Below are positions 5,131 to 40,196 of a stretch of 64,000 nucleotides of DNA, piece by piece (position 1 is the first letter of the stretch; every line of letters starts with the position of its first letter). Origin of the DNA: Macrostomum lignano (Eukaryota); the NCBI GenBank assembly GCA_002269645.1, contig NIVC01000312.1, positions 248,001 through 312,000 of the forward strand, written 5' to 3'. The notes below the pieces were generated by a model. It was not told the origin of the DNA. It was given only the letters and a program-made list of their open reading frames with translations, and made no database searches. A program made the translations under genes and the position numbers.

Positions 5131-5306
5131 CTCTATAAATGTTCGTCCTTACAGGCTCCAAGCTTATCTAAAAAACTGAGTGTACAGCGTCCTTCAGCTT
5201 CATACTTTGTTCATGCACCAAGTTTTTGAATACTTGTATATAGTACTCAGTCATTGGCTTGCTACAAAGAACTCAATATAAATGTCCCATATTCTCACCT
5301 GCGCAG

Positions 5307-6752
5307 CTCTACTCTCAATTCCTTGGACTCTGGGAGCGCACATTGTGGAGAAACGAATGCCTGTGGCAATGTCTCAACTACCGGCTGGCAACTGGAGCGA
5401 CTCGCCTGTCGTCAACATCACCGGTTGCGTGTCAATCCGCAGCTGCTTCCCGTTCCCAGACGCTTGGGGCGCCGGCTACCAGACCGGCATGCTGATCGGC
5501 AAGCTGCTGACCTACTACCTGATCCCCGGGCTGCTCATCGCCCTGTTCTACGGCAAGATGGCCGGTTATTTAATCCGCAGCGCCGGCAACAGAACCGACG
5601 GAACGGCCGCAGCGAACGCGGCCGCGGCTGCTACCACTAGCGCCACTGCGGCACTGGAAGGTCGCAGGAAACTGGCCAAGCTGTCGCTGTGCCTGGCGCT
5701 GGTGTTCTTCGTAGCCTGGGGCCCCGACTACCTGGTGATGCTGCACTTCTTCTTCTGGGCAGATCGGGTTAGCGCGCAGTTTCTTCGGTTCAAAATGGTG
5801 GCCAAGGTGAGTATAGTTTGGTTCGCGAGATGACAAAAGGTTGAAGATGTTTCAGGAGACTCAATTAACGAAATGAAGAGCGGCCGTGTCCATTACGAGT
5901 ATCAAAGCTTTGTTTTGGTTTTTTGGTTCAATCAGCCTAATAGAGTTTTAGAAAGGATTTTCGACGATTGCGCACTCTGCCACGATCGAGTAGGGTATTC
6001 GGCAGTAAAACTGCCGCTCTGACACGGACGTGTACACTGTACAACATTACCACGTCAGTCGACTCACTGCGATGTAACCTGACGTCAATTATAGACGCCC
6101 TTTTAAAGGGCGAAAAGGTTATGGTTAAAAGTCAACATAATGCAAAATAAAAATAATCGTCTACCTCCATCGACTTTGAGGACGTCCGAAGCACTTCACT
6201 TTCCGAACTGCGTGTAATATAGCATCAGCATTCCCTTACGTTGCCACTCGCTTTGAACTGCTTTGAGATGATGCAAACTTACTAACCACAACTAATTAAG
6301 CTGAACTTGTTGCATCACTAAGAGTAAATGCGTTTGACGAAGTTCATACAGAGTTTGTCTAATTAGAGGTTAACTTCGGCTCGTACAGGCACTCTAACTG
6401 AAAATTGTAAAGTTAGTTCAAATACATGTAATCTGAACTACTAGCAGTAGCTAATGAAATAAAAAATGAAAACTAATTGCAGTTGCTGCCCTCGGCCTAT
6501 TCCGCCAGCAATCCAGTCACCCTGTGCATTATCAGCCGACGCTTTCGGCGCCACCTAATCAGCGCCCTGACGTGCGCGCGCTTCGGCGACGCCTCGGAAT
6601 CGGAGACGGCCGATGGGCTTCGCCAGCAGCTGCTGCGGCATCGGCTGCAGGAGCAGCAACAGCGACTGCTGCTGATGCAGCGGGCGAGAGAGCGTCAGAG
6701 GTCGTTAGGCGCGGCAATCGCCGCAGCTGCGGAAGACCAGACATTGGTCTAA
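5307..6752 (+). CDS. Class A neuropeptide GPCR (CCHamide/bombesin-receptor-like), last two coding exons 5307-5806 and 6483-6752; 5' exons not identified
   Basis: TM4 ALLSIP, TM5 YYLIPGLLIALFYGKMA, TM6 RRKLAKLSLCLALVFFVAWGP, TM7 SNPVTLCIISRRFRRH. Donor AAG|GTGAGT at 5806 and acceptor TTGCAG| at 6482 are phase 0-compatible. Confidence 0.85.
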
Positions 6753-10209: not shown

Positions 10210-11563
10210 TTAAATTTTCCCGGCGCCCCAGCTCTGCGCGTGAAATTGCAACACAAAAGCAACGCTTCGGTGGCGCACTCGACAGGCCGACAATTCGGCG
10301 TCAGTCATCCGGTTAAGATCGCGACAGGGGCCGGCCTCGCCACCTAGACCGGCGTCCCAAGAGAATGGATTAAATTGGTCCGCTGGAAATAGACACACCT
10401 GGCCGTGTTCAGCATCCGTATCGCTGGCTTTTCCATAGCGCTCTAGCGCGTACATGAGCAGCTGCGGCCCGGTGGTCAGGTCGACCGTCTCCTGGACGGT
10501 GACACCAACCAGACGGGCCCGCTCAGCCATCGCCTCCAGCACCGTTAGCCAGAACGGGTGACCCCGACGACGGGCGAACATCAGCGAGTTCTCTACGTAG
10601 GGCCGTCGGCCTGGACGGCCGCTCCGTCGCATACTGATGAGTAGGACGCCGCAGTTGCTGAGCGACTGATAATCGGCGATGCTCTTGTTGATTCGGCTAG
10701 CAGCCTGGCGTGTGTGCGAGTAGTTGAATGGCTAGAAATGAAACCGGATTTTGTGCGATCCACTTCAACCAGTGGCGTACGGAGGAATTTTTTATTAGAG
10801 AAGGGCAGGCCTTGTCTCTTTGGAGGGCGCCCCTGTCTCTTGGAGGGCGTCACTGTCTCTTGGAGGGCGCCCCTGTCTTTTGGTGGGCGCCCCTGTCTCT
10901 CGGTAGGCGTCCCTGCCTCTTGGTGGGCGCCCTGTCTCTTGGTAGGCGTCCCTGCCTCTTGGTGGGCGCCCCTGTCTCTTAGTTGGCGCCCGTCTCTTGG
11001 TGGACAACCAAGAAAAATTATATGGTGACAAATTACTTCTGTGTACAAGACGTACATAGCGCCGGGCGAATTGTAAATCGTGTCAATGTACTTTTAGATC
11101 CACACACCTGGCTAAACAGGACATGCTCGAATGGCTGCAGGCACTCGTTGTCCAGGTCAGTGTATAGACCGCCGTAGTGGTACAGGTAAAGGTAGCGCAC
11201 AGAGTCAGCTCTTTGAATGCTCTGAGTGTAACGCAGATAGTGATCAAGGAAGTCTGGCGCCTTGTCGCGTACAAGCAGCAGGTTGTCCTCATCTGACCAG
11301 AACCAATGGTGCCAGGCTGGGAAGCAGGACAACCAGCTAGCGCGCCAGGCCGCAAATCTGTTAGGGATTTGGTCGGCATTGCGCCACGACTGGTGAACAA
11401 TGTGGGCGACTGGCCCAGCAGTTGGGGGAATGAAATCAGCTAGTTGCTGCGGCTGGAGTAGCGGCTTTCTTTGATGTTGGGACTGCACCAACAGCAGGAA
11501 TATCAGGGTGAAAGCAACCATACCTGCCACTAGTAGACTGAAGAGCTGGTGGCGACATGGCAT
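10210..11563 (-). CDS. Glycosyltransferase family 32 (DXD), SUR1/CSH1/OCH1-like type II membrane protein; exons 11563-11108 and 10704-10210
   Basis: N-terminal TM, HIVHQSW..IP, QRADSVRYLYLYHYGGLYTDLD (DXD), ENSLMF..GHPFW, TTGP, FHAQSW. Donor CAG|GTGTGT and acceptor CCAG| are phase 0; an in-frame alternative acceptor lies 27 nt upstream. Confidence 0.9.
10810..11000. repeat. 20-bp GGCGCCCCTGTCTCTTGGTG minisatellite in the GT32 intron
   Basis: Same unit as the 29455-30490 array; preceded by CAGTGGCGTACGGAGG at ~10770. Confidence 0.9.
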
Positions 11564-14500
11564 TATTGGCAAAGTTGAAATTGTGATCTTTAAATTAGAC
11601 TTTATGCATTATGTATAGATATATTCAAGCTTTTTAGTACCTTAACTTAAATGCCAGGTCTTTTTATTTATTATGGAAGTACCTGCAAAATGTATACAAT
11701 GTATAAATTAACTTTTAAAAGGAATTTGAATGCTTTAAAATTTTGTATCATAATGTCATTGTGACAAGTAGATGGCAGGCATATAAATATAATGGTATTA
11801 TTTATATTTACTAAATATCATTCTAGTTTTTTTAGAAATGACTTAAGACAAATAAAAATATACCTTTAAAAAAACTATTTAAAAGTACTTTTCATATGTC
11901 CTAGACCTAAGGGTTCTCTGGTTGCTAAACTTATTACACTAAATTCCACTAATAAGCTATACTAGTTTTGTTTGCATTCTGTTTCTAAATAGTTCTTTAG
12001 AACAATAGATTATTACATTTGTTGGTCCTAATGTCTATAACCTATAGGTCTATGATATCCATTGCTATTTTATATATGATCTATCTAGCATAAGATCATG
12101 GCACTAGAGATTCTTCTATAGTTGAAATTCATAATTGATTTTGAGTTTTGTATATTCCTAATTGCTTTCTCAAATAGGCCCATTGGCCTAGCTTTCTTAA
12201 CTAGTAGGCCATACTGTTTGTAATTCTAATAGAAGCAGTTAAAATAACTATGTTATGATATGAAGTTGAATAATGCTTGAATATTTTTATTATATAGAGA
12301 TAACAAAGGTAAGCCTAGGACCTAGTTTTAACTACATACAAATTATTTAGCTGCTCTAACTTCTCAGTTGCGACAGTTGGGACTCAGAAAGCCATTATTA
12401 ATTTAGTTTAGACTTAAAAAGCCATTGATTTTACTATCTAGCTCTTATTCTATCTATATTGTTAAATAATAACCCTACAAATTAAAGCTTAAAGTAACAA
12501 TATATAGAGCTTATAGAGCTTATAACTTATTTATAGAATAAGTGCTACTTATATTAATAGAATAAAATTCATAGAATTAAAAGGCAAAAATTGGATTATT
12601 TATTTTGAAGGCCTATTTTAATTTAAATATTCAAAGTTTTGAAAAAAAAAATCTATTTTTTTGCAAAGTTAGTTAAACTAAATTTAATTCTAATTATAAG
12701 ATAAACAATAGGCCTAACTTGAGACAATAACTGATCAGGGCATAATATTAGATTTAGAGTGAACATCGGGCCTATTATATTACCTATTTGCTACTTTCAA
12801 GCCATAAAGCTACTTTCAAGAATTTATAGAACTGGACTACTGAAAAAGGAAAAAACACAAATACCCAATACAATACTGACTATTAGAATTAGAAGAGGCT
12901 GAGGCAGAGGCTAACAGCGACCATTCAGATCATACATATTGTTAGCACTTAAAATGAAAAAATCGGACTGACTTTATCAGTTAAATTCGTGCCGAAATAA
13001 TGCCGAGTCTATTACTCATTCAATAGCTAGCTTGAAAAACTATTGGTTAATTATTCTGTCTTTTTAGCAGCTTTGAGTGACAATACTTGGGCTAAAAATT
13101 AATAATCAATAGAACTGTGATGTAAACAAACTCCCACGCAAATTTATTTCCCACCGTTTTAAACCAAGGACTACAAGCATTACAAATTGGCACAAATTTA
13201 ATCTTGCCTCGCCTCATTGGTTTTATGAACCAATTTAATGGTCTCTGTGACGTTGCTAGTTTAAGTGGTCCCGCAAAAGGGCCGTTGGACTATAGTTTCC
13301 CTTGCAATTTCTCATATTAATTTCTCCAATTTTAACTTATAGTAGCGTGCAAATAATCTGTATCAACTGCTAATTCACTGTGTATTTGGTAGGCCTTGCG
13401 CTCGTCTGTAAATTTTGGCACGATCGATAATTTCAAGTTCTCTCGCCAGCCAATGAAAACTCTCCGTGTTTACGCTACCCCCTTTTGCGCTCTTTATTAA
13501 CCCCCCGTCTGGCGGCGGGCTGGTTTTTCACCCCCCTTTCGTGCTGCCGTCCCTTCGCGGCCTTGTTTTCCTTCTCTCTGTCTGGCTGTCTCGAGCCTCC
13601 TTATTTCTCGCCACGGCCCCTCCGTCTGGGCCAGCCTACTCACACGCTTACTTGACTGTCTCACGCCACGGCTGACGCCAATCTCGCCACTGCTACTCAC
13701 TGCCTCCACTGTGTTCATTGCCATTGCTCCTCACGTTACGTCGCCGTTGCATCATTCGTCTGCCACTTGACTTCACATTCAATTTATCTTCAAAAAACCA
13801 TTGTTGCAGCCGCCAGTGCCCAGAAAGCTATAGTTTGTTTATTGACAGTAATAACCAAGCCTAATATTGATACTACCAATAAAACCAACTACGGCAGTTC
13901 CTGCCTTTATCGCCAAGTGCTCCGCTACAAAATCCGCTTTACAAGAGTTGACTTCAACTTATTTTGGGACTAAAACGGCCCTTTTAAGGGTCTTAGCCAT
14001 AGCTAGCCGCTACGCCAACATCGTGACAGTCTCTTTTATCATTCTTTAACATTTAACACATTTTGTCATTACGCTAAGAATGATAAAATAAGATTCATAA
14101 AACCAATGAGTCCAGCATTCTTTTGATTTTTAGGCACACAACATTTGTACGATTGTACACATAAAATTAGCACAGAATACTAATTTCCTCAACGAAAAGT
14201 TTTATGAATTGAGCTATGGGAAAGGCAGTAAATAGAAAATATGAACATAAGGGTCTGCCTCCTATCAGAAGCAATAAAAACTTCTGTGTTGAAAGAATGA
14301 AAACCTCCTATATATCTCCGCAAAGTTTTTTTCAGTAAAACCTAGGCCTCCCAATTTTTTTCTAACTAACGTAGTACGTTTCTCGTCCTTCTAATTGAAG
14401 TAGTTATTGATTTAAACCCGTACTCAATAATTCCTAATTATTGATAAGTATACTAAATGAGTAATACTAGCACTTCGACTATAAACTATTCGACTGTGAA

Positions 14501-25355: not shown

Positions 25356-25699
25356 AACCCCTTGTGTTAGTTTTTCAAATTTCTTTTAAGCTTTGTCCCA
25401 TATCAGTGGTTATATGCGTGCATTAACGATGTTACTGTGCTCTGACTATAATTGATAGAGGTGGCTACTAAGAAAATAGAGTTTTGGTTGCTAGCTGTTA
25501 AAGTAAGCAGATCTGCTATAGTCATTGAAGAATATCAACTAATAGAATAATCATTGACCTGTGTGAGTCCGATTGTGCTTAAAATCATCAAGAGTAAACC
25601 TACAGAGTCATAACCGGAACTGAATCAGGTCGCAGTTTGATGATAGCAAAATCCAGTGAGCTTTCGTGCAAGCTGTCACTGAACAGGAACTACAGGAGC

Positions 25700-28600
25700 T
25701 CAGAGCTCTTCCACCTTTTCAACCGCAGTCGTCTCGGTGCTGCCGATGTAGGAGTTCATCACGGATTGCACTGTCCCATCAGATTTAAGAGCAAACAACG
25801 CCCTGAAAATGTAGAACAGAAGCTCAAGAAGTTCGCACAGGGTGAGTATTGAAACGCCACACCAGAGGCCCAGAATGCCTGCAATTGAAGTTAAAAAATC
25901 GCTGAGAGTTAAATGCAAGACATTCTAACACGGTACTATAATCTGAACATCATTTCAATTGAGTACCTCCAAAGTCAGCCACTAAGTTCTTTGTGGGGTA
26001 GGCTTCCTCTTCAGAGATCTCCTGAATTTTGGCGCTCCACGCTTTGACTGTCAGCCAGGCGAGACGATTTTGAAGCGCCTCGAGTTCTGCGTCAAAGTTG
26101 AGCCTATCACTGGCTGTTTTATTGTCTGACGAAGACTCGGAGTAGCTCTGCACTTTCAGCAATACCTGATAGATATTAGCGAGGCCTCTCATACCGCTGA
26201 TGCTGGTTCTGTAGCCAAAGTTCGAGGCCAGCTGTTTTATTAGCTCAATTGATTGGGTATTTTTTAAATTGGGCCACGAATAAGTGACGAATCTGGTACT
26301 GTAGTCATCTGTGCGGCACGGCGGCTGGCAAATCTGGCTGCCTTCGAACTGGTAACGCTGTATCTCTGACACCTGTTCGTTGTAGCAGGTCTCAACAACT
26401 CGAGAGAAATTGCTAATGTCCTTGATGTCGAAACAGTTTTTGTACTTCGTGACTAAAGCCACTGGAATAGGTTGAAACGATGGTAAACACTTACAGTAGT
26501 CGATAAACTTTTGCACAATGTAGGTGTTGATGCAGTCCTCTCGATCAGAGACAAACTGCCTCTCGGAATCTTTCAAATCACTAAAATGGCAAATTAAGTA
26601 CCTATTCATCCTTCATTTCTAATAAAGACTCGAATGAAATGCAGCTTCACTTACATTGTCCCTCCTTTTAATTCAGTCATCTCACGTAGCTTTGTCAGCT
26701 TTTCAGCCCAATCTGATGAGGCAATTACCGCCTTAGCTGCTCTCTCAATTCTGCAATCATAAAAAATTTTTGATTACAAAAATCGAATACATAGATACAC
26801 ACGAGATCTACATGTTTGAGACTAGTTCACACAGCTCACTTTCCGCCATCATTTGATGAAGATAGATCCCAGGAAGGCAGTCGGTAACTATCCAGTTTTT
26901 CGGTCTCCTGACAAGGACTGGATTTAGTGGAGAGTCTTGAGTACTTCTCAAACCTAAGCTGCACGTCCATGCGTTGAGCAGCCGCTATCGCGATACTCCT
27001 GGACGCCCAGGGAAATTTCTTCTCCGGCACAATGATCGCCTGCGGTTTCAGAAACGGCAGAATGAACTCTTTGGCAAAAAGTTTGTAGAAGCATCGTTGA
27101 AAGAATTCCTTACATTTAGCGCCATATTGCTGTCATCAGAGGATGACATCACGCTGTCGTGAACAACTTGGTTGAGTTTTTCCATGCCAAATGGAAGCCG
27201 ACCCTTGGAATCTGTCGAGTCGGTGAAGTACATGATTGACAGCTCACTATTCGCCAGCTGTGTACTTGTCATATTGGCGGTAAACTTTCGCTTTAGAAAC
27301 TGGTGGCACATGCCAAGCTGGGGGTGCTCAAAATTCACAAAGTGCTCATTGGTGCACTTCTGGCCGGCGAAGCTGCAGCTGGCAAGTGCGATGCTGAGAT
27401 CGCTGCCAAATTGACGAGCGAGCAGATGCCTGCCCACAGAGTCTCTGATGGCGCCTGGGACGCTGCGAAATTTCGAATCTGCGACAATGTTTTAAATTAA
27501 GTCTGAAATTAATTGTTTTAATCTCGGATTAATATAATATTAAACATTCAAAACTCACAGCACAACGCCAAGTTACACGGCTCGAAGGCCATTTCGAAAA
27601 GAGTATGTTGAGAAATTTCTACGCGGTCAATGAAGCGAAGAGCGCGTTCCGGCAAGCAGGCGGGGACCTCAGACTCGAATGCTTTTTGACGCCTGAAATG
27701 AAATTGATTTATCGCTTTTAGCCTTCTGTTGGAATAGTAAAACAGATAAGATGCAGGATCCTCTGGCTCACTCGAAGTGGCTGTAGTTTTCATTCGCTAT
27801 GTCCATCACTACGCTCACTGAGCGGCAGTAGTTGTCCGTATTCGTCTTGGCTACGTCTGGCGTTTCAATTTGCATTTTCAGTAGCCTCCCAACTCCTTAA
27901 ATGTGAGTATTTTTGCAATCCATTTACCATATTGATTGGTTATTGTTTTAGTTAGGCCGTATGAATAAAGTGAGCTTTAGTTCCCAAATCCTAACTTAGC
28001 ATGACAAAAGCAACGCGCCATCGCGTTTCATTTCTGCCCCACTTCAATGCTCCTATGTCTATGGCCAAAAAGAGCTGTATGAAATGGAAGTATATAAAGG
28101 AAAAGACAGTAACCTCAACAGGTGGCAGGAGGGAAGACATTGCAGATCTCGGATCAAAAATGTTGTTGAACAGGAGTGTCGCAAACTCAACGTCAACGAG
28201 CTCCGTGGTCTTCATGACATTGAGATGTCAGCGCGAACGGAAGTGTAGACTAAGTAAAACGGAACAGGATAGTGTTCAATGCATTTGAGCGCACATATAA
28301 GGCAATGCTGACTGCGTTGTTAATATTGAACTTTTTTGTATTTGCTATTGTGTGTAACTGTTGGTCCGTTCGACGATGCGTGGATTGTCTATAAATACAC
28401 TGGCTTGTTGTAGACAGTTGTCTATGGTGAAAAGTCTGGCTTGTTGTAGACAGTTGTCTATGGTAAAAACTCTGGCTTGTTGTAGACAGTTGTCTATGGT
28501 AAAAAGCCCGGCAGCAAAGGATTGAAGAGGGTGGAAATATACGAATCCAAACTTGCAATCGATGGTCAGATTCTCGTTAAAGACAGAGAGCCAGCTTAAC

Positions 28601-31600
28601 TCAATAAAGCGACTTTGCACGCATACAGTGAACCTTCAGTTGACGGCAGCAGCATACCAGGGAATTAGCAACAGAATTCGGTGCTCAGTCATCATTTATG
28701 ACATCAATTCATAAACTATATCTCAATTCCGCTCAGAGTCTGAGAAGTTTGAAAACTCAGAGAAGTAATTGATCCCTTTATTCATACGGCCTATTTCATT
28801 TTACACTATGTAATTAATTCTTCTGCATCATATTTCGCACCGCGGCTTCTCATGCTCTGCTCTTGAATGCTGAACAGACGGCCCCAGGCAACGCAGTCCC
28901 TTCCAGGAAGCGTGTCGTTCTGCCAACCGGTGTACATCGACATTCGCTGCCGTTCCGCCGACTCGGAGCTGGAGCTCACGATACAGTCGTAGTTTTTGGA
29001 TATGGCTATAATTATAAAAACAGAAACGGGCTGCAAGGATTAGTACAGCAAACATTAGAGAAGGTAAAATATTTGCTAGAAATTGGCATCCGCCACGTTT
29101 ACACACTGAAACTACTAGCCTGAGCACTCAACCGATTAAATTTCCTGCCAACCAGTTTCGCTCAGTTGGTCAATAAGCGAATGCAAGCCTAAGTTTATTT
29201 GATCAACACGATCGCTCTTAGTAACTATGGCAATAGCAACGGTAGCCCCGATTGATATATGGTCAATTTAACAGCCGAAACATGGATCAAATTTAACGGT
29301 TATCAGCGTATTTGATCGTGAAAGCTCCAAATAGAAACCAAATATTCCAAATTCTTTACTCTGGGTGTTCTTATTTTTCTAACTGTGGTGTTTCAAAGGA
29401 ATTTTTTGGGAATTGAAGGGGCCGCAGCCCTTTCGTGTGGTGGTTGGCGACCCTGTCTGTCTCTTGGTGGGCGCCCCTGTCTCTTGGTGGGCGCCCCTGT
29501 CTCTTGGTGGGCGCCCCTGTCTCTTGGTGGGCGCCCCTGTCTCTTGGTGGGCGCCCCTGTCTGCCTCTTGGTGGGTGCCCCTGTCTCTTGGTGGGCGCCC
29601 CTGTCTGTCGGTTAGCGCCCCTGTCTGCCTCTTGGTGGGCGCCCCTGTCTCTTGGTGGGCGCCCCTGTCTCTTGGTTAGCGCCCCTGTCTCTTAGTGGAT
29701 GCCCCTGTCTCTTAGTAGGCGCCCCTATCTCTTGGTGGGCGCCCCTGTCTCTTGGTTAGCGCCCCTGTCTGTCTCTTGGTGGGCGCCCCTATCTCTTGGT
29801 GGGCGCCCCTGTCTCTTGGTTAGCGCCCCTGTCTGCCTCTTTGTGGGCGCCCCTGTCTCTTGGTGGGTGCCCCTGTCTCTTGGTGGACGCCCCTATCTCT
29901 TGGTGGGCGCCCCTGTCTCTTGGTTAGCGCCCCTGTCTATCGCTTGGTGGGCGCCCCTATCTCTTGGTGGGCGCCCCTGTCTCTTGGTTAGCGCCCCTGT
30001 CTGTCTCTTGGTGGGCGCCCCTATCTCTTGGTGGGCGCCCCTGTCTCTTGGTTAGCGCCCCTGTCTGTCTCTTGGTGGGCGCCCCTATCTCTTGGTGGGC
30101 GCCCCTGTCTCTTGGTTAGCGCCCCTGTCTGCCTCTTTGTGGGCGCCCCTGTCTCTTGGTGGGTGCCCCTGTTTCTTGGTGGGCGCCCCTGTCTCTTGGT
30201 TAGCGCCCCTGTCTCTTGGTTAGCGCCCCTGTCTGCCTCTTTGTGGGCGCCCCTGTCTCTTGGTGGGTGCCCCTGTCTCTTGGTGGGCGCCCCTATCTCT
30301 TGGTGGGCGCCCCTGTCTCTTGGTTAGCGCCCCTGTCTATCTCTTGGTGGGCGCCCCTATCTCTTGGTGGGCGCCCCTGTCTCTTGGTGGGCGCCCCTGT
30401 CTCTTGGTGGGCGCCCCTGTCTCTTGGTGGGCGCCCCTGTCTCTTGGTTAGCGCCCCTGTCTCTTAGTGGATGCCCTGTCTCTTAGTGGGCACCCCTACC
30501 CCGGTGGATGCCCGTTCAAGTCTTGTCAAAAGTTGAGCTCCTGTCATACTTTTGGGCTTCTTTACCACTTTCGTTTAGATTTTGGAGAAGCCCCACTGCT
30601 TTAGGGCGCGCCCCGATGGCCACCCTGCAAACGCCAATGTTGATTTTTTCCTGTATATTGAATGGGTCTACGACAACTGCCTTCCATTCCTCCCCCTAAA
30701 ATACGATGCTTAACAATAAAATAAACCAAGAAATTTTATTACTGCTCCGTAAATTTCAGTCACGGTAAACGCCTTAAATCGTGCGTTTTAGAAGTCATAA
30801 ATTCATATTGCACAATTTACACTGTTTATAGCTAGGTGTGGTAATTAATAGAGTATCCAGGCTTACCATTTTTTTTCAGAAAATGTTCTGTAAAATATGT
30901 CTTTTAGAAGCTAGTCATTATTGTTTTTATCTGGGATGCTCTGTGTGAAACCTGAGCAGGCCTAAGATTTGCACTTCGCTATATTGAACTATTCATGTCG
31001 GCAAAAATACAAAAAATTATTGAATATACCTGGTACAAGAACAAAATTTATATATTCAGGTGTTGATTAACTTCACTACTTATGTTTGAGCGGTAGCGAA
31101 TAATGATTCTCGATATCAGTATTTGTTAAATATCATCGCTGTAGCATTTCTGGCAGTCTAATTTGAACAGGTGCAACCTTATCGATTTAAGGCGTTCTCA
31201 AACTCACGACAGTAAGGTATGTCGCACAATGCAGCATTTAGCCTGCCGCTCTCATCGTCCGTAAAAAAGCAATAAGGCCCGTCTGAAAATGCCGCTAAGT
31301 TGCTGAAGTTTCCGATGTGCATAGGCTGGCTGTCTGGAATCAAATTAAAGATTTGAGCGTGAGCAATTTCTTTATTAGATTAGTAATTTACTGTGAAATT
31401 GGACTTGCCGACATCCCGGATCTGCAGGATGACGGCAATGCTACTGTCTGAACCGCAAGTCTGTAGGCGGCTGTTGGCGCACGGTGATGTACAGTTTGTT
31501 CGGCTGCTGTTGTCAACGCCGTCCAATCGTCCGCACAGACAGTCGCCACCGGTTACGAGAGCCGCATAAGGGAAATTGTAGCGATCGCAGCACTCGGCGC

Positions 31601-33162
31601 AGGTCTCATGCGCTTCGATGCCGTTTCTGTAGCAGGTGAAGTTGAATGCAGCCGCGGTCGCTGCATCAGTCACGGGGAAGCAACCGATCTGTTGAAGCTT
31701 AGGACCTAAAGCGAGTAGGAAAAAGTTGTTCAGAAAGCACCCGGATATTAACAGTATTAACAGTACGAATATACCAAACCATTTTTAGAAAATTCTTCGT
31801 GCTTTAACAATTACTTGCTTGCTAGCTAACTTTTTGTTGGGCAGCCTCTCTAACAAGAATCAAGTCGCCAGCCCTCCGGACCGTTAAGGCATTCAACAGC
31901 TCAGCAAGAAGATCGGATTTTGCATCAGAGCAGCCTTGGCAAGCCTCTAAATTTCATCAGAACGTCGACCAAATGTGTTTGTATCAGCTCTGACTTCGCA
32001 GGTCACTGGATTTCACCCAGGCGGCGCTTCTGGGAGGTAACACCTGGTGACCATGAACAACTCATTGGGAATTTCTCTGATGTCTCTGATCAAGCCTCGA
32101 CAATGGACAAACCTCTACTGGTAGGTATCCTCAGTTAGTCTCTTAAACATTCAGCCATCACCCAGACGCCATCGACACTTTCAACCGGGGGGCTGGATTC
32201 CCCCTATGATAGTTCTACTGTTAATTAACCTAAAAGATTTTGTTGAATTACTCACGAGTTGCTTTGTGTAGAAACGTCGATAGAGGTAAACCAGGAGGAG
32301 AGCGGCATCGAGTCTCATTGTCCGAGAAGTTAAGAGACAGCAGGCTCGCAGCCAGGCTGGCCTCGCCTCTGCTCTGCAGCATCCGAGCTGCATCGTTCCA
32401 TCTCATACACGGCGTCCTAGTGATGTAGGGCTTTAAACTCGGGACAGCTGTGTAGTTAAAGTACCTTGTGTCGTTGAAGTCCAGCCGAACTGTTGAGTAC
32501 CCGTATACCACAGCCGAGCTGACGTTGCCTGTGTAATCATTGCCAGTGAGACTGGTTCGGCAATCCAAATCTTGGCCTACGGTTTTCAATGGAATTTTCT
32601 AAAAGTTAGTCGTACTGACAACAATAATAGTTTATAATAAGCAACTTTTATTAATTATGTTAAACTTGCCGTTAAGAGGCACCTGTAACGACTTCATCAG
32701 CGATTCCTCGGTGCTTTGAATGACATCTAGAAATGCTTTGGTCGGCTCGTTCAGTACAGAATCAGTTTTTTTGGATAGATCAAAACTGTAGAATTCGATT
32801 TTTTCGCTTGTGTTCTTCTTAGTAAGATGCTCCATGTTCTCAATATTGAAGGTTGTCAACTTTTCTACCATGCGACTGGCCGTGATGGCCCGCGTGGGAC
32901 AGATGTACACATCCGGGAACTGGAACTTCAACGAGGACATGCTCATGCTGGTCATCACTGGGGCCTGAAGGAACCTTTCAAACAAAGTGGACAGGTGGTA
33001 GGCAAACCCGCTGTAGGTGCCTAGCAGGAATAGGACCCAGATGAGCCTGCCAAGTTGGCTGGACTGCTCAGAGAATCTGCCAAGTCCGTGAGCAGTTGTG
33101 TAGCCACAGAAACTGCTCACTGGTGCGCTCAGCTTCCGTGATGAGGAGTTGTAGCTACTCAT
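25700..33162 (-). CDS. DEG/ENaC channel subunit (1027 aa) with kringle-WSC-kringle insertion; exons 33162-32683, 32598-32256, 31705-31409, 31333-31208, 29005-28841, 27856-27772, 27692-27559, 27478-27114, 27039-26840, 26750-26655, 26580-25967, 25878-25700
   Basis: N-terminal TTAHG motif, TM1, FPDVYIC, SCSFAGQKC..HPQLGMCHQF, Cys-rich thumb (DCINT, CKCLP, CQPPC), pre-TM2/TM2 VADFGGILGLWCGVSILTLCE. All 11 introns are phase-compatible (one needs a GC donor). Exons sum to 3084 nt, in frame to the stop. Confidence 0.88.
28401..28508. repeat. 36-bp repeat x3 containing GTCTATGG, in an ENaC intron
   Basis: Unit TGGCTTGTTGTAGACAGTTGTCTATGGT(G/A)AAAA(G/A)(T/C)C. Confidence 0.85.
29455..30490. repeat. 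20-bp GGCGCCCCTGTCTCTTGGTG minisatellite in ENaC intron 4, inside a degenerate MITE-like shell (~29383-30639)
   Basis: Unit as at 10810. The right end reads CATTGGCGTTTGCAGGG on the minus strand; its match to the left end is weak (11/17) and no TSD is seen. Confidence 0.9.
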
Positions 33163-34158
33163 GGCTAGTGGTGTGTTTTTTGGTTGGGCCTGACGGTGTA
33201 AAAAATGTTTAAGCTGCAGCCGTTTAAGCTCAGCTAAAAGAATAGCTGAGAATATTTGGGTCAGTATCGAGAGAATTTAAGTCAAAGCACTTTTTCGTCC
33301 GTTTTCTGCTGAAATAGACTGCGTGGAATAGAATAGCTTGTTCACAAACGGCTGAGCCAATACAATTCATGTGTGCTCAGAAACGGACTGTTTCCTGTAC
33401 CTGCACCCTCGTAAAGTCCTCAACTAGTTCTGTCTACCGTGTACGCTGAAATTAATTTGGATGAAGAGATTGACAGAATACATGTCTACATTTGCCAAAC
33501 ATATTACTTTGTCAGTAGAAACTTCAGTGCCTGTACATGAACAACTGAAGTACACTCTATTTCTTAGAAATGAACTGGAGGCCGGTAAGGAGAGTCTATT
33601 TTGCCGTATCGCCAGTGCATTTAGTATGCTCTCGAGAGAACGCATAGCTATAAATGAGGTTCGTCGTATTATTTTTTGTGCCTTTACAATTCACATAAAT
33701 ATACTCGTACAGAACATCGCGATGGCAATTCCGGAAACTTTGCGCATTCTCAGAAACATCGATAATGATCGTTATTTACGCAATTTGGTCTTTAAAAAAG
33801 ATTCCGTTTGCAATGATTTACATCGCATCATCCAATAAACTATATACAGTGCTTATTTATTATGTCATAAGTCACACTGCACCTGACTTATAAAGGTCAG
33901 TATTTGTACCTATATTTTTTCTGATAGGAAAATATACACAAAAACAATCCGAAATATACAGAGTGCAATGCTGAATGCCAAAATTCTGTAGCTACGCTTT
34001 AAACTTCCAGCAACTGAAAACTCCGTCCAGGAGACCTTCATCGAGAATATGGAGAGTCAACTTCACATCTAACGCCGATTTGATCAGATATCAGGATAAA
34101 AAAGAAAAATTTTAGTACCTTGTATACATGTAAGTCTGGTTTAATAAGCGCTATAAAT

Positions 34159-35484: not shown

Positions 35485-35960
35485 GCTGGAGAGTATAATC
35501 AAAGAAAAAAAATGGTTGAAAAGCGCGGTTTTGTCGGCAGGGTAAAAACAATGGGACATGTAGTTTCTGAGCTCTCATCTAGGTGCCCAGAAGAGGACGC
35601 TGGGAAAAAGGCGGCTGCATGAGGTGGGATGTAGAGACTCCCAGATGGAGAGAGTTTGGAGAAATTGGAGAGGGGAAGAGAAATGGGCTGGGAATAAAAT
35701 ATGAAAATGCAGAGAGAATTGATGGTTAATGCTGGGTTTGGCAAACGGACGAACAATGAGAAAGTGGTGGAGATTTATGATAGGTTCAGAGAAATAAAAA
35801 GGTGAATAGCCACATCACACAGGCGTTCCTATTGGTTCTGATCTAAGAAGCATAAGAAAATCCACACAGCTCTAACGGTATAAATTATTGCTACGTTTTA
35901 TATTAGTGACCAGGTGTTGCAAAGGTTAGAGTTCCAGGAGCAATTCAATTGCTGATAACA

Positions 35961-36291
35961 ATGACTCTAATTACCCGGCTTCTTTTTCTTAGCTGCTCGC
36001 TGTCTGTCTCCATGGCAGCCCTGACAATTGTATGCGAAAATGATACAATGACGGCCGACTGCGCAACCCAGGTGATATCCATTTCCATTGCAACATTCGG
36101 CAAGTCGAGCATGTTCTCCGCCTCGTGTCCGAACCAGTCGCCGACTGAGTGCAACAGCGGCACCGCCTACGGGCTGATCAGCGACGCCTGCGAGGGCCAG
36201 AACAGCTGCTCGATGGCCGCGAGTAAAGCGCTGTTTGGCGATCCGTGTCCCGGATACGAGAGCTACATGGTGCTGTACTACAGCTGTAAAG
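35961..36291 (+). CDS. Secreted SUEL lectin, first exon (signal peptide + SUEL domain); downstream exon(s) not identified
   Basis: MTLITRLLFLSCSLSVSMA signal; VCENDTMTADC..ATFGK..CEGQNSCSMAASKALFGDPCPG..YMVLYYSC; donor G|GTGAGG (phase 1). Confidence 0.85.
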
Positions 36292-36374
36292 GTGAGGCGT
36301 TGAGGTTTCAACAGTACAACAGATCGATTTTCAAACGGGTGCCATTTTTTATTCGGTCCTTTTTCTTCATGGTT

Positions 36375-37590
36375 GGACAGTCAGTTCCTCAGTTTGACTG
36401 GCACGAAATGAAAGTCCTTCATCATAGTTGCATGGACTGTCAGTTCCTCAGTTTAACTGGCACGGAATGAAAGTCCTTCATCATAGTTGCATGGACTGTC
36501 AGTTCTTCAGTTTAACTGGCACGGAATGAAAGTCCTTCATCATAGTTGCATGGACTGTCAGTTCCTCAGTTTGACTGGCACGAAATGAAAGTCCTTCATC
36601 ATAGTTGCATGGACTGTCAGTTCCTCAGTTTGACTGGCACGAAATGAAAGTCCTTCATCATAGTTGCATGGACTGTCAGTTCTTCAGTTTAACTGGCACG
36701 GAATGAAAGTCCTTCATCATAGTTGCATGGACTGTCAGTTCTTCAGTTTAACTGGCACGGAATGAAAGTCCTTCATCATAGTTGCATGGACTGTCAGTTC
36801 CTCAGTTTAACTGGCACGGAATGAAAGTCCTTCATCATAGTTGCATGGACTGTCAGTTCTTCAGTTTAACTGGCACGGAATGAAAGTCCTTCATCATAGT
36901 TGCATGGACTGTCAGTTCTTCAGTTTAACTGGCACGGAATGAAAGTCCTTCATCATAGTTGCATGGACTGTCAGTTCTTCAGTTTAACTGGCACGGAATG
37001 AAAGTCCTTCATCACAGTGGGACTGTCAGTTCCTCAGTTTAACTGGCACGGAATGAAAGTCCTTCATCATAGTTGCATGGACTGTCAGTTCCTCAGTTTA
37101 ACTGGCACGGAATGAAAGTCCTTCATCATAGTTGCATGGACTGTCAGTTCCTCAGTTTAACTGGCACGGAATGAAATTCCTTCATCATAGTTGCATGGAC
37201 TGTCAGTTCCTCAGTTTAACTGGCACGGAATAAAAGTCCTTCATCATAGTTGCATGGACTGTCAGTTCTTCAGTTTAACTGGCACGGAATGAAAGTCCTT
37301 CATCATAGTTGCATGGACTGTCAGTTCCTCAGTTTAACTGGCACGGAATGAAATTCCTTCATCATAGTTGCATGGACTGTCAGTTCCTCAGTTTAACTGG
37401 CACGGAATGAAAGTCCTTCATCATAGTTGCATGGACTGTCAGTTCCTCAGTTTAACTGGCACGGAATGAAATTCCTTCATCACAGTGGGACTGTCAGTTC
37501 CTCAGTTTGACTGGCACGGAATGAAATTCCTTCATCACAGTGGGACTGTCAGTTCCTCAGTTTGACTGGCACGGAATGAAAGTCCTTCAT
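36375..37590. repeat. 59-bp minisatellite (~21 units)
   Basis: Unit GGACTGTCAGTTCCTCAGTTTAACTGGCACGGAATGAAAGTCCTTCATCATAGTTGCAT. Confidence 0.95.
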
Positions 37591-38966: not shown

Positions 38967-40196
38967 ATGGAGGGCACAATGTTTTTCACACTTCGTCAGG
39001 CCAATTGCACGCCGGAGTTTCGTCGGGCAGCCTACAATCCCTCGGACACTGTCCGGGTGACCATCTACAGCTTGACAGTGTTGCAGGCCGCCATTCTACC
39101 CGTTGGGGCTGCCCTCAACATTGCCTGTTTTGCTACCCTGCTGCGCTATCCACTTGGCGCCGAGGTGAACGGGCACTTTGTGAGTTTCAGCGTCTGCGAT
39201 ACAGCGTTTCTCCTGTTTAATCTGCTCGACACCATCAGCCATTGTGTCGAGAACTCAACACCGTTGACTGACGGTCCGGAACCCTTCAACTACATTGCCT
39301 ATGTCCATCCGATTGCGTGGACACTGCGCAGTGTGGTGTACACTGCTCACAGTTGGCAGACGGTGCTGCTTAGCGGCCTCAAATGGCTACGCATCTGCCG
39401 GCCGCTGTCGGCCCTGCCAGAGTCCAGAATTCGCCACCTCATCGGGCTTGTTTGGCTGTACAGTCTGGTCACCAGCATTCCACCGATTCTGCTGTTCCAA
39501 GCATTTGTCACGGTTCTGTATGCCAACTGCCATGACCAGGGCTTCCGGGTCGCCGGCAGCGGTTATCACCGACTCTACAGCATCGACAACAGTGGAGACG
39601 TTGGTGGCGGCATCATACCGCCCGCCATTCCACCGTCATTTGTCGCCGTGAACGCGTCCTTGCTGCCGGCGCTTATCTGCCTGATCTGCAGTCTGGGCAT
39701 CGTGTGGCGCCTGCGACACCCAGTCCTGCATCATCTACCGCGTCGCCGGCATCTCCGTCGGCAAGAAAACAACTTCCTGGATCCTGGCGCAGCTCGGCTA
39801 GGCCGCGAAGCCACTCGCGCAGTGCTCATGTCGGCTAACAGTTTCCTGCTCTTCCAAATCCCGATGGTTATCTGGACATTGGTGGACACCTGGTACTGGA
39901 AGCTGCTGCAGCCGGCGGTCTTCTCAATGCTCGTTGTAGTCAGCAACACAATCAGCCAAGCATTCTTTGCGGTGGACCTGTCGGTGTGTCTTCACAGCAA
40001 TCACCAGTTTTCTAGCAACCTTCGAAGATACCTGCAGCCGTTTTGCCAGTGCAGAAAGCACTTCAAGCAGCAAAAACAGCAGCAGAAGCCGTGCAACAAG
40101 CAGTTTGAGCTTCGACGACTTCGAGGCTTTTCGGACTGCAATGGCGTGGAAGAGCAGGCCGGGACCTTCTCTATCTGCAGCTCAACTCTGATCTGA
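38967..40196 (+). CDS. Intronless divergent class A GPCR (peptide-receptor-like), 409 aa
   Basis: Seven hydrophobic segments; TM1 GAALNI, TM2 SVCDT, TM3 end LKWLRICRPL, TM5 LLPALIC, TM6 FLLFQIP. Confidence 0.85.
   Translation: MEGTMFFTLRQANCTPEFRRAAYNPSDTVRVTIYSLTVLQAAILPVGAALNIACFATLLRYPLGAEVNGHFVSFSVCDTAFLLFNLLDTISHCVENSTPLTDGPEPFNYIAYVHPIAWTLRSVVYTAHSWQTVLLSGLKWLRICRPLSALPESRIRHLIGLVWLYSLVTSIPPILLFQAFVTVLYANCHDQGFRVAGSGYHRLYSIDNSGDVGGGIIPPAIPPSFVAVNASLLPALICLICSLGIVWRLRHPVLHHLPRRRHLRRQENNFLDPGAARLGREATRAVLMSANSFLLFQIPMVIWTLVDTWYWKLLQPAVFSMLVVVSNTISQAFFAVDLSVCLHSNHQFSSNLRRYLQPFCQCRKHFKQQKQQQKPCNKQFELRRLRGFSDCNGVEEQAGTFSICSSTLI

What the first reader, a model, noticed from the sequence alone, without database searches (positions are those of the whole stretch)
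25700..33162. DEG/ENaC channel carrying a kringle-WSC-kringle module in its extracellular finger region
Seen: a complete, frame-consistent 12-exon DEG/ENaC gene (HG motif, TM1, palm, thumb, GVS selectivity filter). About 380 aa are inserted between FPDVYIC and the SCSF..C motif: kringle 1 (DC..GNDYTG..PCMRW..CRSP / GPYCF..CDIPYC), a WSC domain (IGCF..CAECC..DCLCG..CTSPC..TCG) and kringle 2 (DC..YTG..T..GRDCVAW / NYCRS / PACL..EPCNLALC). Established: the finger is the variable gating and ligand-sensing part of ENaC/ASIC/FaNaC; kringles bind proteins or lysine; WSC domains bind glycans; kringle + WSC occur together in Kremen receptors. Inference: this could be an ion channel with a built-in receptor module, gated by a glycan, a protein ligand or a matrix tether. 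I know of no characterised channel with this architecture.
Basis: partly seen in the sequence, partly recalled or inferred. Interest (0 to 1): 0.92.

Follow-up and report, generated by a model that had tools for sequence, protein, structure and literature searches.

The report
Flatworm DEG/ENaC channel with kringle-WSC finger
This is a real, intact sodium-channel (DEG/ENaC) gene of the flatworm Macrostomum lignano whose outer "finger" region carries about 390 extra residues built from two kringle-like domains, one of them split by a WSC domain; the design is conserved in a flatworm gene family that nobody has studied, and it could couple binding of an outside molecule to channel opening.

Summary
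Confirmed: a 12-exon, GT-AG, frame-consistent DEG/ENaC gene lies on the minus strand at 33162-25700. I revised three junctions, giving 1040 aa. Pfam ASC scores 134.9 bits, and the HG motif, TM1, TM2 and a GVS filter are present.

The window is Macrostomum lignano. UniProt A0A1I8HSZ3 matches exons 6-12 at 492/493 residues but lacks exons 1-5.

The module is real, but its order is not kringle-WSC-kringle. It is kringle-1 N-half, WSC, kringle-1 C-half, then kringle 2, so the WSC is nested in the CRxP...GPYC loop of kringle 1.
- WSC passes Pfam's cut-off when scanned alone.
- Both kringles fail Pfam's cut-off but match a canonical kringle profile (hhalign 97%, E about 1e-11; controls 3% or less).

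Paralogues at 35-52% identity have the same exon plan. Their models come from an RNA-seq-guided annotation.

An exhaustive profile search found the full module only in M. lignano channels. Amphioxus and acorn-worm channels carry other modules at the same finger site. I found no literature on this architecture.

Function is inferred: a binding module that regulates gating. I rate it a new variant of a known kind, interest about 0.6.

The parts
32683..33162 (-). Exon 1 (aa 1-160): start codon, short cytosolic N-terminus with the HG motif (TTAHGLGR), TM1 (about aa 40-61), beta1 'FPDVYIC', and the first part of the finger.
   Evidence: The N-terminus is the same length as in paralogue P0001. It aligns to FaNaC 73-160 and ENaC-alpha 54-150. 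The 32683/32598 junction is the best-signalled of several in-frame GT-AG pairs; the paralogue has its intron about 5 codons further on, in phase 1.
32256..32598 (-). Exon 2 (aa 161-274): linker plus the kringle-1 N-half, C173...YTG...(29-aa extra loop)...PC224MRW...RC258RSPPGLPLSTF.
   Evidence: GLPLSxF after CRSP is conserved in all paralogues, so it is coding sequence. The phase-1 donor position is shared with L001 and L002. In hhalign, K1 with the WSC excised matches the kringle profile at 97.2%.
31405..31705 (-). Exon 3 (aa 275-374): WSC domain with 10 Cys (C283-C358), nested in kringle 1.
   Evidence: Pfam WSC scores 33.9 and 29.4 bits against a cut-off of 27.8. The Kremen1 WSC matches at 29.9 bits. 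The donor AA|GTCCAA is weak but sits at the same position and phase as in L001. An alternative pair, 31392 (GTAAAT) with 31325, would add 3 aa.
31208..31329 (-). Exon 4 (aa 375-415): kringle-1 C-half, GPYC395FF...LC410DIPYC415. At 122 nt it is the same length as in the paralogue.
   Evidence: hhalign of K1C alone gives 96.0%, E 4.8e-9. It aligns to the C-terminal ends of the ROR2, Kremen1, plasminogen and HGF kringles.
29457..30497 (.). Minisatellite of about 50 copies of a 20-bp unit inside intron 4 (a 2.2-kb intron). It is a likely reason why older gene models of this locus lack exons 1-5.
   Evidence: The link to the truncated models P0011-13 is my inference.
28841..29005 (-). Exon 5 (aa 416-470): kringle-2 first part, DC423...MYTGWQNDTLPGRDC453VAW. 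At 165 nt and phase 1-1 it is identical to L001.
   Evidence: The profile matches prothrombin, tPA and ROR1 kringle N-parts.
27772..27895 (-). Exon 6 (aa 471-511): kringle-2 middle, ...LLKMQIETPD...NYC494RS, plus the start of an extended loop.
   Evidence: I moved the acceptor to 27895 so that the conserved 'IQTPD' motif is included. UniProt model P0011 starts at the Met inside this exon and confirms the exon 6/7, 7/8 and 8/9 junctions.
27559..27692 (-). Exon 7 (aa 512-556): kringle-2 end, ...VPAC524...EPC551NLALC556. At 134 nt it is identical to L001.
   Evidence: hhalign of K2 against the kringle profile gives 97.4%, E 1.6e-11.
27114..27478 (-). Exon 8 (aa 557-678): last finger helix and beta-ball, ASC591SFAGQKC598...GMC614HQF.
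   Evidence: The Pfam ASC match resumes at about profile position 147 (P0001). It aligns to ENaC-gamma 256-297. At 365 nt it is the same length as in L002.
26840..27039 (-). Exon 9 (aa 679-744): palm strands. At 200 nt it is the same length as in L001 and L002.
26655..26750 (-). Exon 10 (aa 745-776): a 96-nt symmetric exon (phase 2-2). It is omitted in some older models (P0011, P0013) and so may be a cassette exon.
25967..26580 (-). Exon 11 (aa 777-981): Cys-rich thumb, knuckle, and palm up to LVADFGG.
   Evidence: Pfam ASC best stretch 780-991 aligns to profile 296-455. It aligns to FaNaC 417-584.
25700..25878 (-). Exon 12 (aa 982-1040 plus the stop at 25702-25700): TM2 with the GVS filter (ILGLWCGVSILTLCELLELL) and a short C-terminus.
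   Evidence: The hydropathy peak is at 976-1012. The exon is identical to P0011.

Best explanation
What it is (shown, about 0.9-0.95): a single intact gene of Macrostomum lignano encoding a two-TM DEG/ENaC-family channel subunit of 1040 aa.

A disulfide-rich, heavily glycosylated module of about 390 aa is inserted in the alpha1-alpha3 part of the finger, the top outer corner of each subunit. The module is a kringle-like domain with a WSC domain nested in its CRxP...GPYC loop, followed by a second kringle-like domain whose equivalent loop is lengthened.

The nesting most likely arose by exon shuffling. In the most divergent paralogue the kringle-1 N-half, the WSC and the kringle-1 C-half are three separate phase 1-1 exons. 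A symmetric WSC exon dropped into the phase-1 intron that splits the kringle explains that layout.

How it most likely works (inferred, about 0.4): the channel assembles as a trimer like other family members. The three modules then form a crown of binding domains on the part of the ectodomain that sets the gating modality in FaNaC, ASIC and ENaC. Binding of an extracellular macromolecule (a glycan, glycoprotein or protein) by the WSC/kringle surfaces would shift the finger against the thumb and palm, and so change the open probability of a Na+-selective, probably amiloride-sensitive pore. That would make the family a diversified set of sensory or ligand-modulated channels.

Lysine binding of the plasminogen type and furin-type proteolytic activation are unlikely.
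For: Gene and channel core:
- ASC 134.9 bits; HG motif, TM1, GVS filter and thumb present; the closest solved relatives are FaNaC, ASIC, ENaC and PPK26.

Species and existing annotation:
- 492/493 identity to M. lignano A0A1I8HSZ3 over exons 6-12.

One transcript:
- Phases forbid skipping the module.
- Paralogue genes L001 and L002 have the same exon plan, with exon lengths of 165, 134, 200, 96 and 365 nt shared.
- Their models come from an RNA-seq-guided transcriptome annotation (PMC5730564).

WSC:
-.

Kringles:
- 27 of 27 and 63 of 63 PDB hits of the two profiles are kringle proteins, and the kringle-1 alignment runs across the excised WSC.
- hhalign gives 97.2% and 97.4%, E 2.9e-11 and 1.6e-11, with all six Cys aligned for kringle 1 and five of six for kringle 2. 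Reversed and shuffled controls give 3.1% or less.

Conservation:
- The module is conserved about as well as the core (47% against 52% identity to P0001), with all Cys invariant.

Insertion site:
- The module lies between Pfam ASC profile positions 129 and 147, which corresponds to FaNaC 161-195.
- That region is the FaNaC finger alpha1-alpha3 segment needed for FMRFamide recognition and gating (10.1101/2023.02.01.526556).

Diversification:
- At least eight paralogue lineages at 35-52% identity exist.

Proteolysis:
- No conserved R-x-K/R-R sites.
Against: - No transcript of this locus was examined. The only public protein models of the locus are 5'-truncated and disagree around exons 9-10.
- The kringles fail Pfam's cut-off. 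The kringle-1 N-half alone is weak (hhalign 15%).
- The AlphaFold model was unusable (pLDDT 49), so neither the folds nor the geometry of the nested insertion have been seen.
- Nothing here shows a ligand, a current or an expression site.
- Three other M. lignano DEG/ENaCs gave no peptide response in oocytes (PMC9234716). These channels can be hard to activate heterologously.
Confidence: 0.45

Rival explanations
1. Mechanical tether. The WSC/kringle crown anchors the channel to the extracellular matrix, mucus or glycocalyx. Force on the tether pulls the finger and opens the pore, giving a mechanosensory degenerin with a built-in tether instead of separate matrix partners.
For: Established knowledge, not tested here: fungal Wsc1-type proteins and polycystin-1 carry WSC domains in mechanosensing contexts, and C. 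elegans MEC-4 channels are proposed to need extracellular links. Here, the module sits at the outermost corner of the ectodomain, is rigid and disulfide-rich (22 Cys), and consists of adhesion-type domains.
Against: Eight or more diverged paralogue lineages look more like a diversified receptor repertoire than one touch channel. No matrix partner or expression site is known. Nothing in the sequence separates a tether from a ligand site.
Confidence: 0.22
2. Structural or accessory role only. The module serves folding, trafficking, subunit selection or clustering, or shields the ectodomain, and does not take part in gating.
For: The finger tolerates unrelated modules at the same site in other phyla: F5/8C plus kringle in amphioxus, and four LDLa repeats in Ptychodera. 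That suggests a permissive surface site. The lysine-binding residues of the kringles are not conserved (alignment).
Against: The finger is the gating-modality region in every characterised subfamily (FaNaC data; ASIC and ENaC from established knowledge). The module is conserved as strongly as the core over deep paralogy.
Confidence: 0.18
3. ENaC-GRIP-like autoinhibitory insert. The module keeps the channel shut until a protease removes or clips it.
For: ENaC alpha and gamma carry a regulatory finger insertion, the GRIP domain (established knowledge; PMC13488063 appeared in the search list but was not read). Kringles occur in protease systems.
Against: No conserved furin-type sites occur in any paralogue; there is a single RPRR, in P0003 only. 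The module is a compact disulfide-locked unit rather than an excisable tract, and it is unrelated to GRIP.
Confidence: 0.07
4. Gene-model artefact, or optional exons. The kringle and WSC exons would belong to another transcript or be mostly skipped, or the locus would be a decaying duplicate in this recently duplicated genome.
For: Public models of this locus start in exon 6 (P0011-13). Some paralogue models lack the kringle-1 C-half (P0006, P0003). The exon 3 donor is weak. Exons 4+3, 5 and 10 are in-frame units.
Against: Exon 1 cannot join exon 8 in frame. Exon 2 is required and has no start or stop of its own. All 12 exons are open, with every family-invariant residue kept. The full-length paralogue ORFs come from an RNA-based annotation. 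The truncated models begin just after two repeat-filled introns.
Confidence: 0.06

Closest known systems
FMRFamide-gated Na+ channels (FaNaC; PDB 7yvb, 8on7)
   Same: They are the closest solved structures by sequence (E 1.3e-14). They share the two-TM DEG/ENaC core. In FaNaC the finger alpha1-alpha3 region is needed for ligand recognition and gating, and that is exactly where the module sits.
   Different: FaNaC has about 35 residues where this protein has about 465. FaNaC has no kringle or WSC. Peptide gating of this family is untested. Other M. lignano DEG/ENaCs near the FaNaC clade did not respond to peptides (PMC9234716).
Kremen1/2 (kringle-WSC-CUB Dickkopf co-receptors; PDB 5fww, 5fws)
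   Same: They are the best PDB hit of the module profile (E 2.9e-9), and both the WSC and kringle pieces match. They are the only solved proteins that combine the two domain types.
   Different: Kremen has the domains in series (kringle, then WSC, then CUB) on a single-pass receptor. Here the WSC is nested inside a kringle loop, a second kringle follows, there is no CUB, and the host protein is an ion channel.
GRIP domain of ENaC alpha/gamma subunits
   Same: It is a lineage-specific regulatory insertion in the finger of a DEG/ENaC subunit. ENaC-gamma 256-297 aligns just after the module.
   Different: GRIP is an unrelated beta-strand insert with furin-excised inhibitory tracts (established knowledge). 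No conserved furin sites occur here.
Predicted amphioxus and hemichordate DEG/ENaCs with accessory domains (Branchiostoma LOC144905634 and relatives; a Ptychodera flava 'beta-2-like' protein)
   Same: Extra extracellular modules are inserted immediately before Pfam ASC profile position 129, the same finger site. The amphioxus proteins include a kringle.
   Different: Their kringle is canonical (73 bits) and is combined with F5/8 type C domains. Ptychodera has four LDLa repeats. None has a WSC or a nested arrangement, and all are uncharacterised predictions. The acquisitions are probably independent.
C. elegans degenerins MEC-4/MEC-10
   Same: They are DEG/ENaC channels with enlarged Cys-rich extracellular regions and a proposed link to extracellular matrix (established knowledge). 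The pre-TM2 motif 'LVADFGG' is similar.
   Different: The nematode extensions are not kringle or WSC domains, and matrix contact is made through separate proteins.

Membership tests
DEG/ENaC (Pfam ASC, PF00858) | A profile match above the curated cut-off that spans the N-terminal and C-terminal halves of the family model. | tested here: met
   134.9 bits against a cut-off of 23.6, in 3 stretches. Paralogues score 67-147 bits.
DEG/ENaC (Pfam ASC, PF00858) | Two transmembrane segments flanking a large ectodomain, a pre-TM1 His-Gly motif, and a G/S-x-S filter in TM2. | tested here: met
   The sequence shows TTAHGLGR, TM1 at aa 40-61 (aligned to FaNaC and ENaC TM1), and a TM2 hydropathy peak containing G-V-S.
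DEG/ENaC (Pfam ASC, PF00858) | Trimeric, amiloride-sensitive, Na+-selective channel activity. | not testable with these tools
   This needs expression and electrophysiology.
Kringle (PF00051) | A Pfam profile match above the gathering score. | tested here: not met
   Kringle 2 scores 22.5 bits in my first model and gives no hit in the revised model (cut-off 34.3). Kringle 1 with the WSC excised gives no hit. Paralogues score 14.8-17.9 bits.
Kringle (PF00051) | Six cysteines collinear with the 1-6, 2-4, 3-5 kringle framework, plus the Y-x-G, C-x-x-W, (N)YCR and GPxC motifs. | tested here: met
   hhalign against 27 canonical kringles gives 97.2% for K1 minus WSC (76 columns, template 1-79) and 97.4% for K2 (73 columns). 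Controls give 3.1% or less. All PDB hits of both profiles are kringle proteins. The K1 N-half alone is weak (15%).
Kringle (PF00051) | The triple-loop kringle fold. | tested here: inconclusive
   AlphaFold2 with a 5-sequence alignment gave mean pLDDT 49. The Foldseek hits were meaningless.
WSC (PF01822) | A Pfam profile match above the gathering score over the full domain. | tested here: met
   33.9 and 29.4 bits (cut-off 27.8) over profile positions 2-81 of 82. The score is borderline, 27.5, within the whole protein. Paralogues reach up to 41.1 bits, and 5 of 6 match. The Kremen1 WSC matches at 29.9 bits.
WSC (PF01822) | Carbohydrate binding. | not testable with these tools
   This needs glycan arrays or binding assays.
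Kremen receptors | A serial kringle-WSC-CUB ectodomain on a single-pass membrane protein. | tested here: not met
   No CUB domain was found. The WSC is nested, not serial. The host is a two-TM channel.
FaNaC subfamily | Gating by FMRFamide-type peptides, with the conserved aromatic finger residues. | not tested
   FaNaC is only the nearest solved relative by sequence. The finger stretch that holds those residues is replaced by the module.
ENaC GRIP-type proteolytic regulation | Furin or other protease sites flanking an inhibitory tract in the finger. | tested here: not met
   No R-x-K/R-R site occurs in the window protein or in 5 of 6 paralogues.

The most novel reading that the evidence does not exclude
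These proteins could be the first DEG/ENaC channels with a built-in receptor domain. In this reading a macromolecule, either a specific glycan or glycoprotein or a matrix tether, gates the pore directly through a kringle(WSC)-kringle crown on the finger. The same finger site (Pfam ASC position about 129) would be a general hot spot where different animal lineages have captured adhesion or receptor modules by exon shuffling to invent new gating modalities: kringle/WSC in flatworms, discoidin/kringle in amphioxus, LDLa in acorn worms.
Probability: 0.25. Interest if true: 0.85.

Novelty: new variant of a known kind. Interest (0 to 1): 0.6.

Why it matters
How the variable finger of DEG/ENaC channels turns very different stimuli into gating is an open question. 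The known stimuli include protons, peptides, proteases and force.

This family is a natural case in which recognisable binding domains are fused into that site. That makes the question directly testable:
- The module can be deleted, swapped or expressed alone.
- M. lignano allows RNAi, in situ hybridisation and transgenesis.

The WSC domain nested in a kringle loop is also an unusual domain-in-domain arrangement, and its exon-shuffling history can still be read from the exon phases.

Practically, the public annotation of this locus is truncated and should be corrected.

Tried and rejected
I folded the same module from paralogue P0001 instead, with a 5-sequence alignment. The result was mean pLDDT 49, with the WSC region near 30, and the Foldseek search on it gave only noise.
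- A Pfam scan of kringle 1 with the WSC removed gave no hit. Kringle identity therefore rests on profile-PDB and profile-profile comparisons with controls.
- My first exon model (1030 aa) was replaced after comparison with paralogue genes.
  - The good-looking donor at 31392 (GTAAAT) was dropped in favour of the conserved-position donor at 31405. This junction remains ambiguous by 3 aa.
  - The exon 1/2 junction has other in-frame GT-AG pairs with weaker signals.
- A second DEG/ENaC copy in the window: none found.
- The three M. lignano DEG/ENaCs tested by Dandamudi et al. are different genes.
- Literature searches for ASC plus kringle or WSC, and for the paralogue gene identifiers, found nothing.
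- The word-indexed protein search is leaky. It missed the 100%-identical P0011, so the absence of a full-length model of this locus in the database is not proven.
- I looked for nested kringle/WSC proteins outside the channel family among the best 150 profile hits and found none. The 8 I scanned with Pfam (beyond channel paralogue P0021) carry WSC or kringle repeats, never both, and none of the non-M. lignano hits has a channel core.

Full report
**1. Gene model**

Translating the minus strand of 25400-33400 gave a chain of open segments. These join through GT-AG junctions into a frame-consistent 12-exon gene, from the ATG at 33162 to the stop at 25702-25700.

My first model had 1030 aa. Comparison with homologues changed three junctions:
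- The paralogue alignment showed a conserved 'IQTPD' block that lies upstream of my first exon 6 acceptor.
- The exon map of the paralogue gene in L001 showed that the WSC exon ends in phase 2 and that the next exon is 122 nt long.

The revised model has these exons: 33162-32683, 32598-32256, 31705-31405, 31329-31208, 29005-28841, 27895-27772, 27692-27559, 27478-27114, 27039-26840, 26750-26655, 26580-25967 and 25878-25700. It encodes 1040 aa.

Two uncertainties remain. Neither touches a domain.
- The exon 3/4 junction has a weak donor at the conserved position. A better-looking donor 13 nt downstream would add 3 aa.
- The exon 1/2 junction is the best-signalled of several in-frame pairs.

**2. 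Organism and existing annotation**

The best database relatives are all from Macrostomum lignano.

UniProt A0A1I8HSZ3 (P0011, 493 aa, 'Amiloride-sensitive sodium channel') is identical to the window protein at 492 of 493 positions. It runs from the Met inside exon 6 to the stop, but omits aa 708-777. The window is therefore M. lignano.

The public models of this locus, and of two 95-99% homeologues (P0012, P0013), lack exons 1-5. Those exons encode the N-terminus, TM1, kringle 1 and the WSC. The truncation point lies just after two long introns filled with minisatellites. That probably explains it, though this is my inference.

**3. Channel core**

- Pfam ASC scores 134.9 bits against a cut-off of 23.6.
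- The sequence shows the pre-TM1 HG motif, TM1, 'FPDVYIC', the beta-ball motif 'ASCSFAGQKC...GMCHQF', a Cys-rich thumb, 'LVADFGG', and TM2 with a G-V-S filter.
- The closest solved structures are FaNaC (E 1.3e-14), then ASIC, PPK26 and ENaC.

I found nothing that suggests a dead pore.

**4. The insert**

About 390 residues (aa 161-556, exons 2-7) carry 22 cysteines and 11 N-glycosylation sequons.

The order along the mRNA is not kringle, WSC, kringle. It is:
- Exon 2: C...YTG...C.RW...RCRSP (kringle-1 N-half).
- Exon 3: the WSC.
- Exon 4: GPYCFF...C.IPYC (kringle-1 C-half).
- Exons 5-7: the second kringle.

The residues after CRSP ('PGLPLSxF') are conserved in every paralogue, so that stretch is coding sequence rather than intron.

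*WSC.* It is supported directly:
- 33.9 and 29.4 bits alone against a cut-off of 27.8, and 27.5 in the whole protein.
- Up to 41 bits in paralogues.
- A 29.9-bit match to the Kremen1 WSC in the PDB.

*Kringles.* Both fail Pfam's cut-off, at 22.5 bits or less against 34.3. I therefore tested them in two other ways.

(a) I built a profile of kringle 1 with the WSC cut out in silico, and a profile of kringle 2, and searched both against all PDB sequences.
- They hit only kringle proteins: 27 of 27 and 63 of 63 hits at E up to 10, with best E values of 0.011 and 0.002.
- The kringle-1 alignment runs straight across the excision point: 'esrCRsPpgllseGPyCff..CdvPyC' against ROR2 'haYCRNPGG-QMEGPWCF..CDVPSC'.

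(b) I ran hhalign against an alignment of 27 canonical kringles taken from plasminogen, HGF and invertebrate multi-kringle proteins.
- Kringle 1 minus WSC: 97.2%, E 2.9e-11, 76 columns covering the whole template, with all six Cys aligned.
- Kringle 2: 97.4%, E 1.6e-11.
- Controls: reversed profiles 0.1%; twenty column shuffles at most 3.1%; WSC against kringle 0%.
- The kringle-1 C-half alone gives 96%. The N-half alone gives only 15%.

So kringle 2 and the C-half of kringle 1 are secure. The N-half is supported mainly by its collinear contribution to the joint alignment and by its cysteines.

In these alignments, the positions of the plasminogen-type lysine-binding residues (the acidic pair after CRNP and the tryptophans) are not conserved. 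Lysine binding is therefore unlikely. This is an inference plus established knowledge.

The attempted structure test failed.

**5. One transcript, and a conserved family**

- Exon 1 ends in phase 0 and exon 8 starts in phase 1. The module cannot simply be skipped, because exon 2 is needed to restore the frame.
- Paralogue genes at two other loci have the same plan: L001 (P0001, 52% identity) and L002 (P0008, 35% identity). Several exon lengths are identical (165, 134, 200, 96 and 365 nt).
- Those NCBI models come from the Mlig_3_7 annotation. That annotation is a genome-guided transcriptome assembly with TransDecoder ORFs, not an ab initio prediction (PMC5730564). For the paralogues, the whole architecture is therefore backed by RNA.
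- All module cysteines are invariant, and the module is about as conserved as the core.

**6. Origin of the nesting**

In L002 the kringle-1 N-half, the WSC and the kringle-1 C-half are three separate phase 1-1 exons. A symmetric WSC exon dropped into the phase-1 intron that splits the kringle gives exactly this result. This is classical exon shuffling (inference).

In the window gene and in L001 the 3' boundary of the WSC exon has slid to phase 2.

**7. Position in the channel**

- The Pfam ASC match stops at about profile position 129 before the module and resumes at about 147 after it.
- Against FaNaC, residues 20-106 of P0001 align to 73-160 and residues 572-600 align to 196-224. About 465 residues therefore replace FaNaC 161-195.
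- In Aplysia FaNaC that stretch is the alpha1-alpha3 part of the finger. It holds W167, F188 and Y189, which are needed for FMRFamide recognition and gating (10.1101/2023.02.01.526556).

**8. Distribution and novelty**

I ran an exhaustive HMMER search of 1.84 billion representative proteins with the module profile. Full-length module hits came only from M. lignano (P0002, 4, 7, 8, 10, 15, 17, 21, 33).

The other best hits I checked are multi-WSC or multi-kringle proteins from other organisms, and none of the non-M. lignano hits has a channel core.

UniProt already labels family members 'WSC domain-containing protein', and one of them 'Kringle domain-containing protein'.

Other DEG/ENaC predictions carry different modules at the same site:
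- Branchiostoma proteins have F5/8 type C domains plus a canonical kringle (73 bits) ending just before ASC position 129.
- A Ptychodera protein has four LDLa repeats at the same place.

I found no paper on any of these. The three M. lignano DEG/ENaCs that have been tested electrophysiologically are other genes.

**9. Mechanism**

Shown: a channel subunit with an extracellular, conserved binding-type module on the finger.

Inferred: the module binds a macromolecule and thereby regulates gating.

I favour a ligand or matrix-sensing role with a diversified repertoire (about 0.4). The alternatives, in order, are:
- a pure mechanical tether (about 0.2);
- a non-gating structural role (about 0.2);
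- GRIP-like proteolytic control (under 0.1, because no conserved furin sites exist);
- a gene-model artefact (about 0.05).

**10. Verdict**

This is a new variant of a known kind. The family is uncharacterised, lineage-specific and conserved, and it is already present in databases as automatic predictions.

- The proteins are not new to the databases.
- The kringles are divergent.
- All functional claims are inference.

Noticed in passing
window 29457-30497 and 10813-11003: The same 20-bp minisatellite unit (TGTCTCTTGGTGGGCGCCCC) forms an array of about 50 copies inside intron 4 of the channel gene and a 9.6-copy array 18 kb away. The whole window is packed with minisatellites (38 TRF rows).
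   Followed up: partly
window 28400-28506: A 36-bp unit is repeated 3 times inside intron 5 of the channel gene.
   Followed up: no
window 27895 to 25700 (exons 6-12): The public protein models of this locus (UniProt A0A1I8HSZ3) and of its 95-99% homeologues start at an internal Met in exon 6. They also disagree on exons 9-10. The annotation is 5'-truncated and needs correcting. Exon 10 (96 nt, phase 2-2) may be a cassette exon.
   Followed up: partly
window 35949-36470 (+): An ORF with a SUEL-type galactose/rhamnose-binding lectin domain (57 bits) lies about 2.8 kb upstream of the channel gene, on the other strand.
   Followed up: no
window 38967-40196 (+) and 5282-5833 (+): Two ORFs give weak rhodopsin-family GPCR (7tm_1) matches of 24.5 and 27.2 bits, both below the 30.5 cut-off. 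They may be divergent flatworm GPCR genes.
   Followed up: no
window 11033-11572 (-): An ORF matches the glycosyltransferase DXD sugar-binding region (Gly_transf_sug, 53.7 bits).
   Followed up: no
P0009, P0170-P0172 (Branchiostoma), P0177 (Ptychodera flava): Predicted DEG/ENaC proteins of amphioxus carry F5/8 type C domains plus a canonical kringle. An acorn-worm protein carries four LDLa repeats. In each case the extra domains end just before Pfam ASC profile position 129. This looks like a recurrent insertion hot spot in the finger.
   Followed up: partly
L002 6673-8562 (paralogue P0008 gene): In the most divergent paralogue, the kringle-1 N-half, the WSC and the kringle-1 C-half are three consecutive symmetric phase 1-1 exons of 297, 312 and 123 nt. 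This is a readable trace of exon shuffling into an intra-kringle intron.
   Followed up: yes
L001 27-614 and 1733-2119: The paralogue locus has a zf-U1 gene and a ribosomal protein L22e gene upstream. These differ from the neighbours in the window, so the paralogues are dispersed rather than tandem.
   Followed up: no
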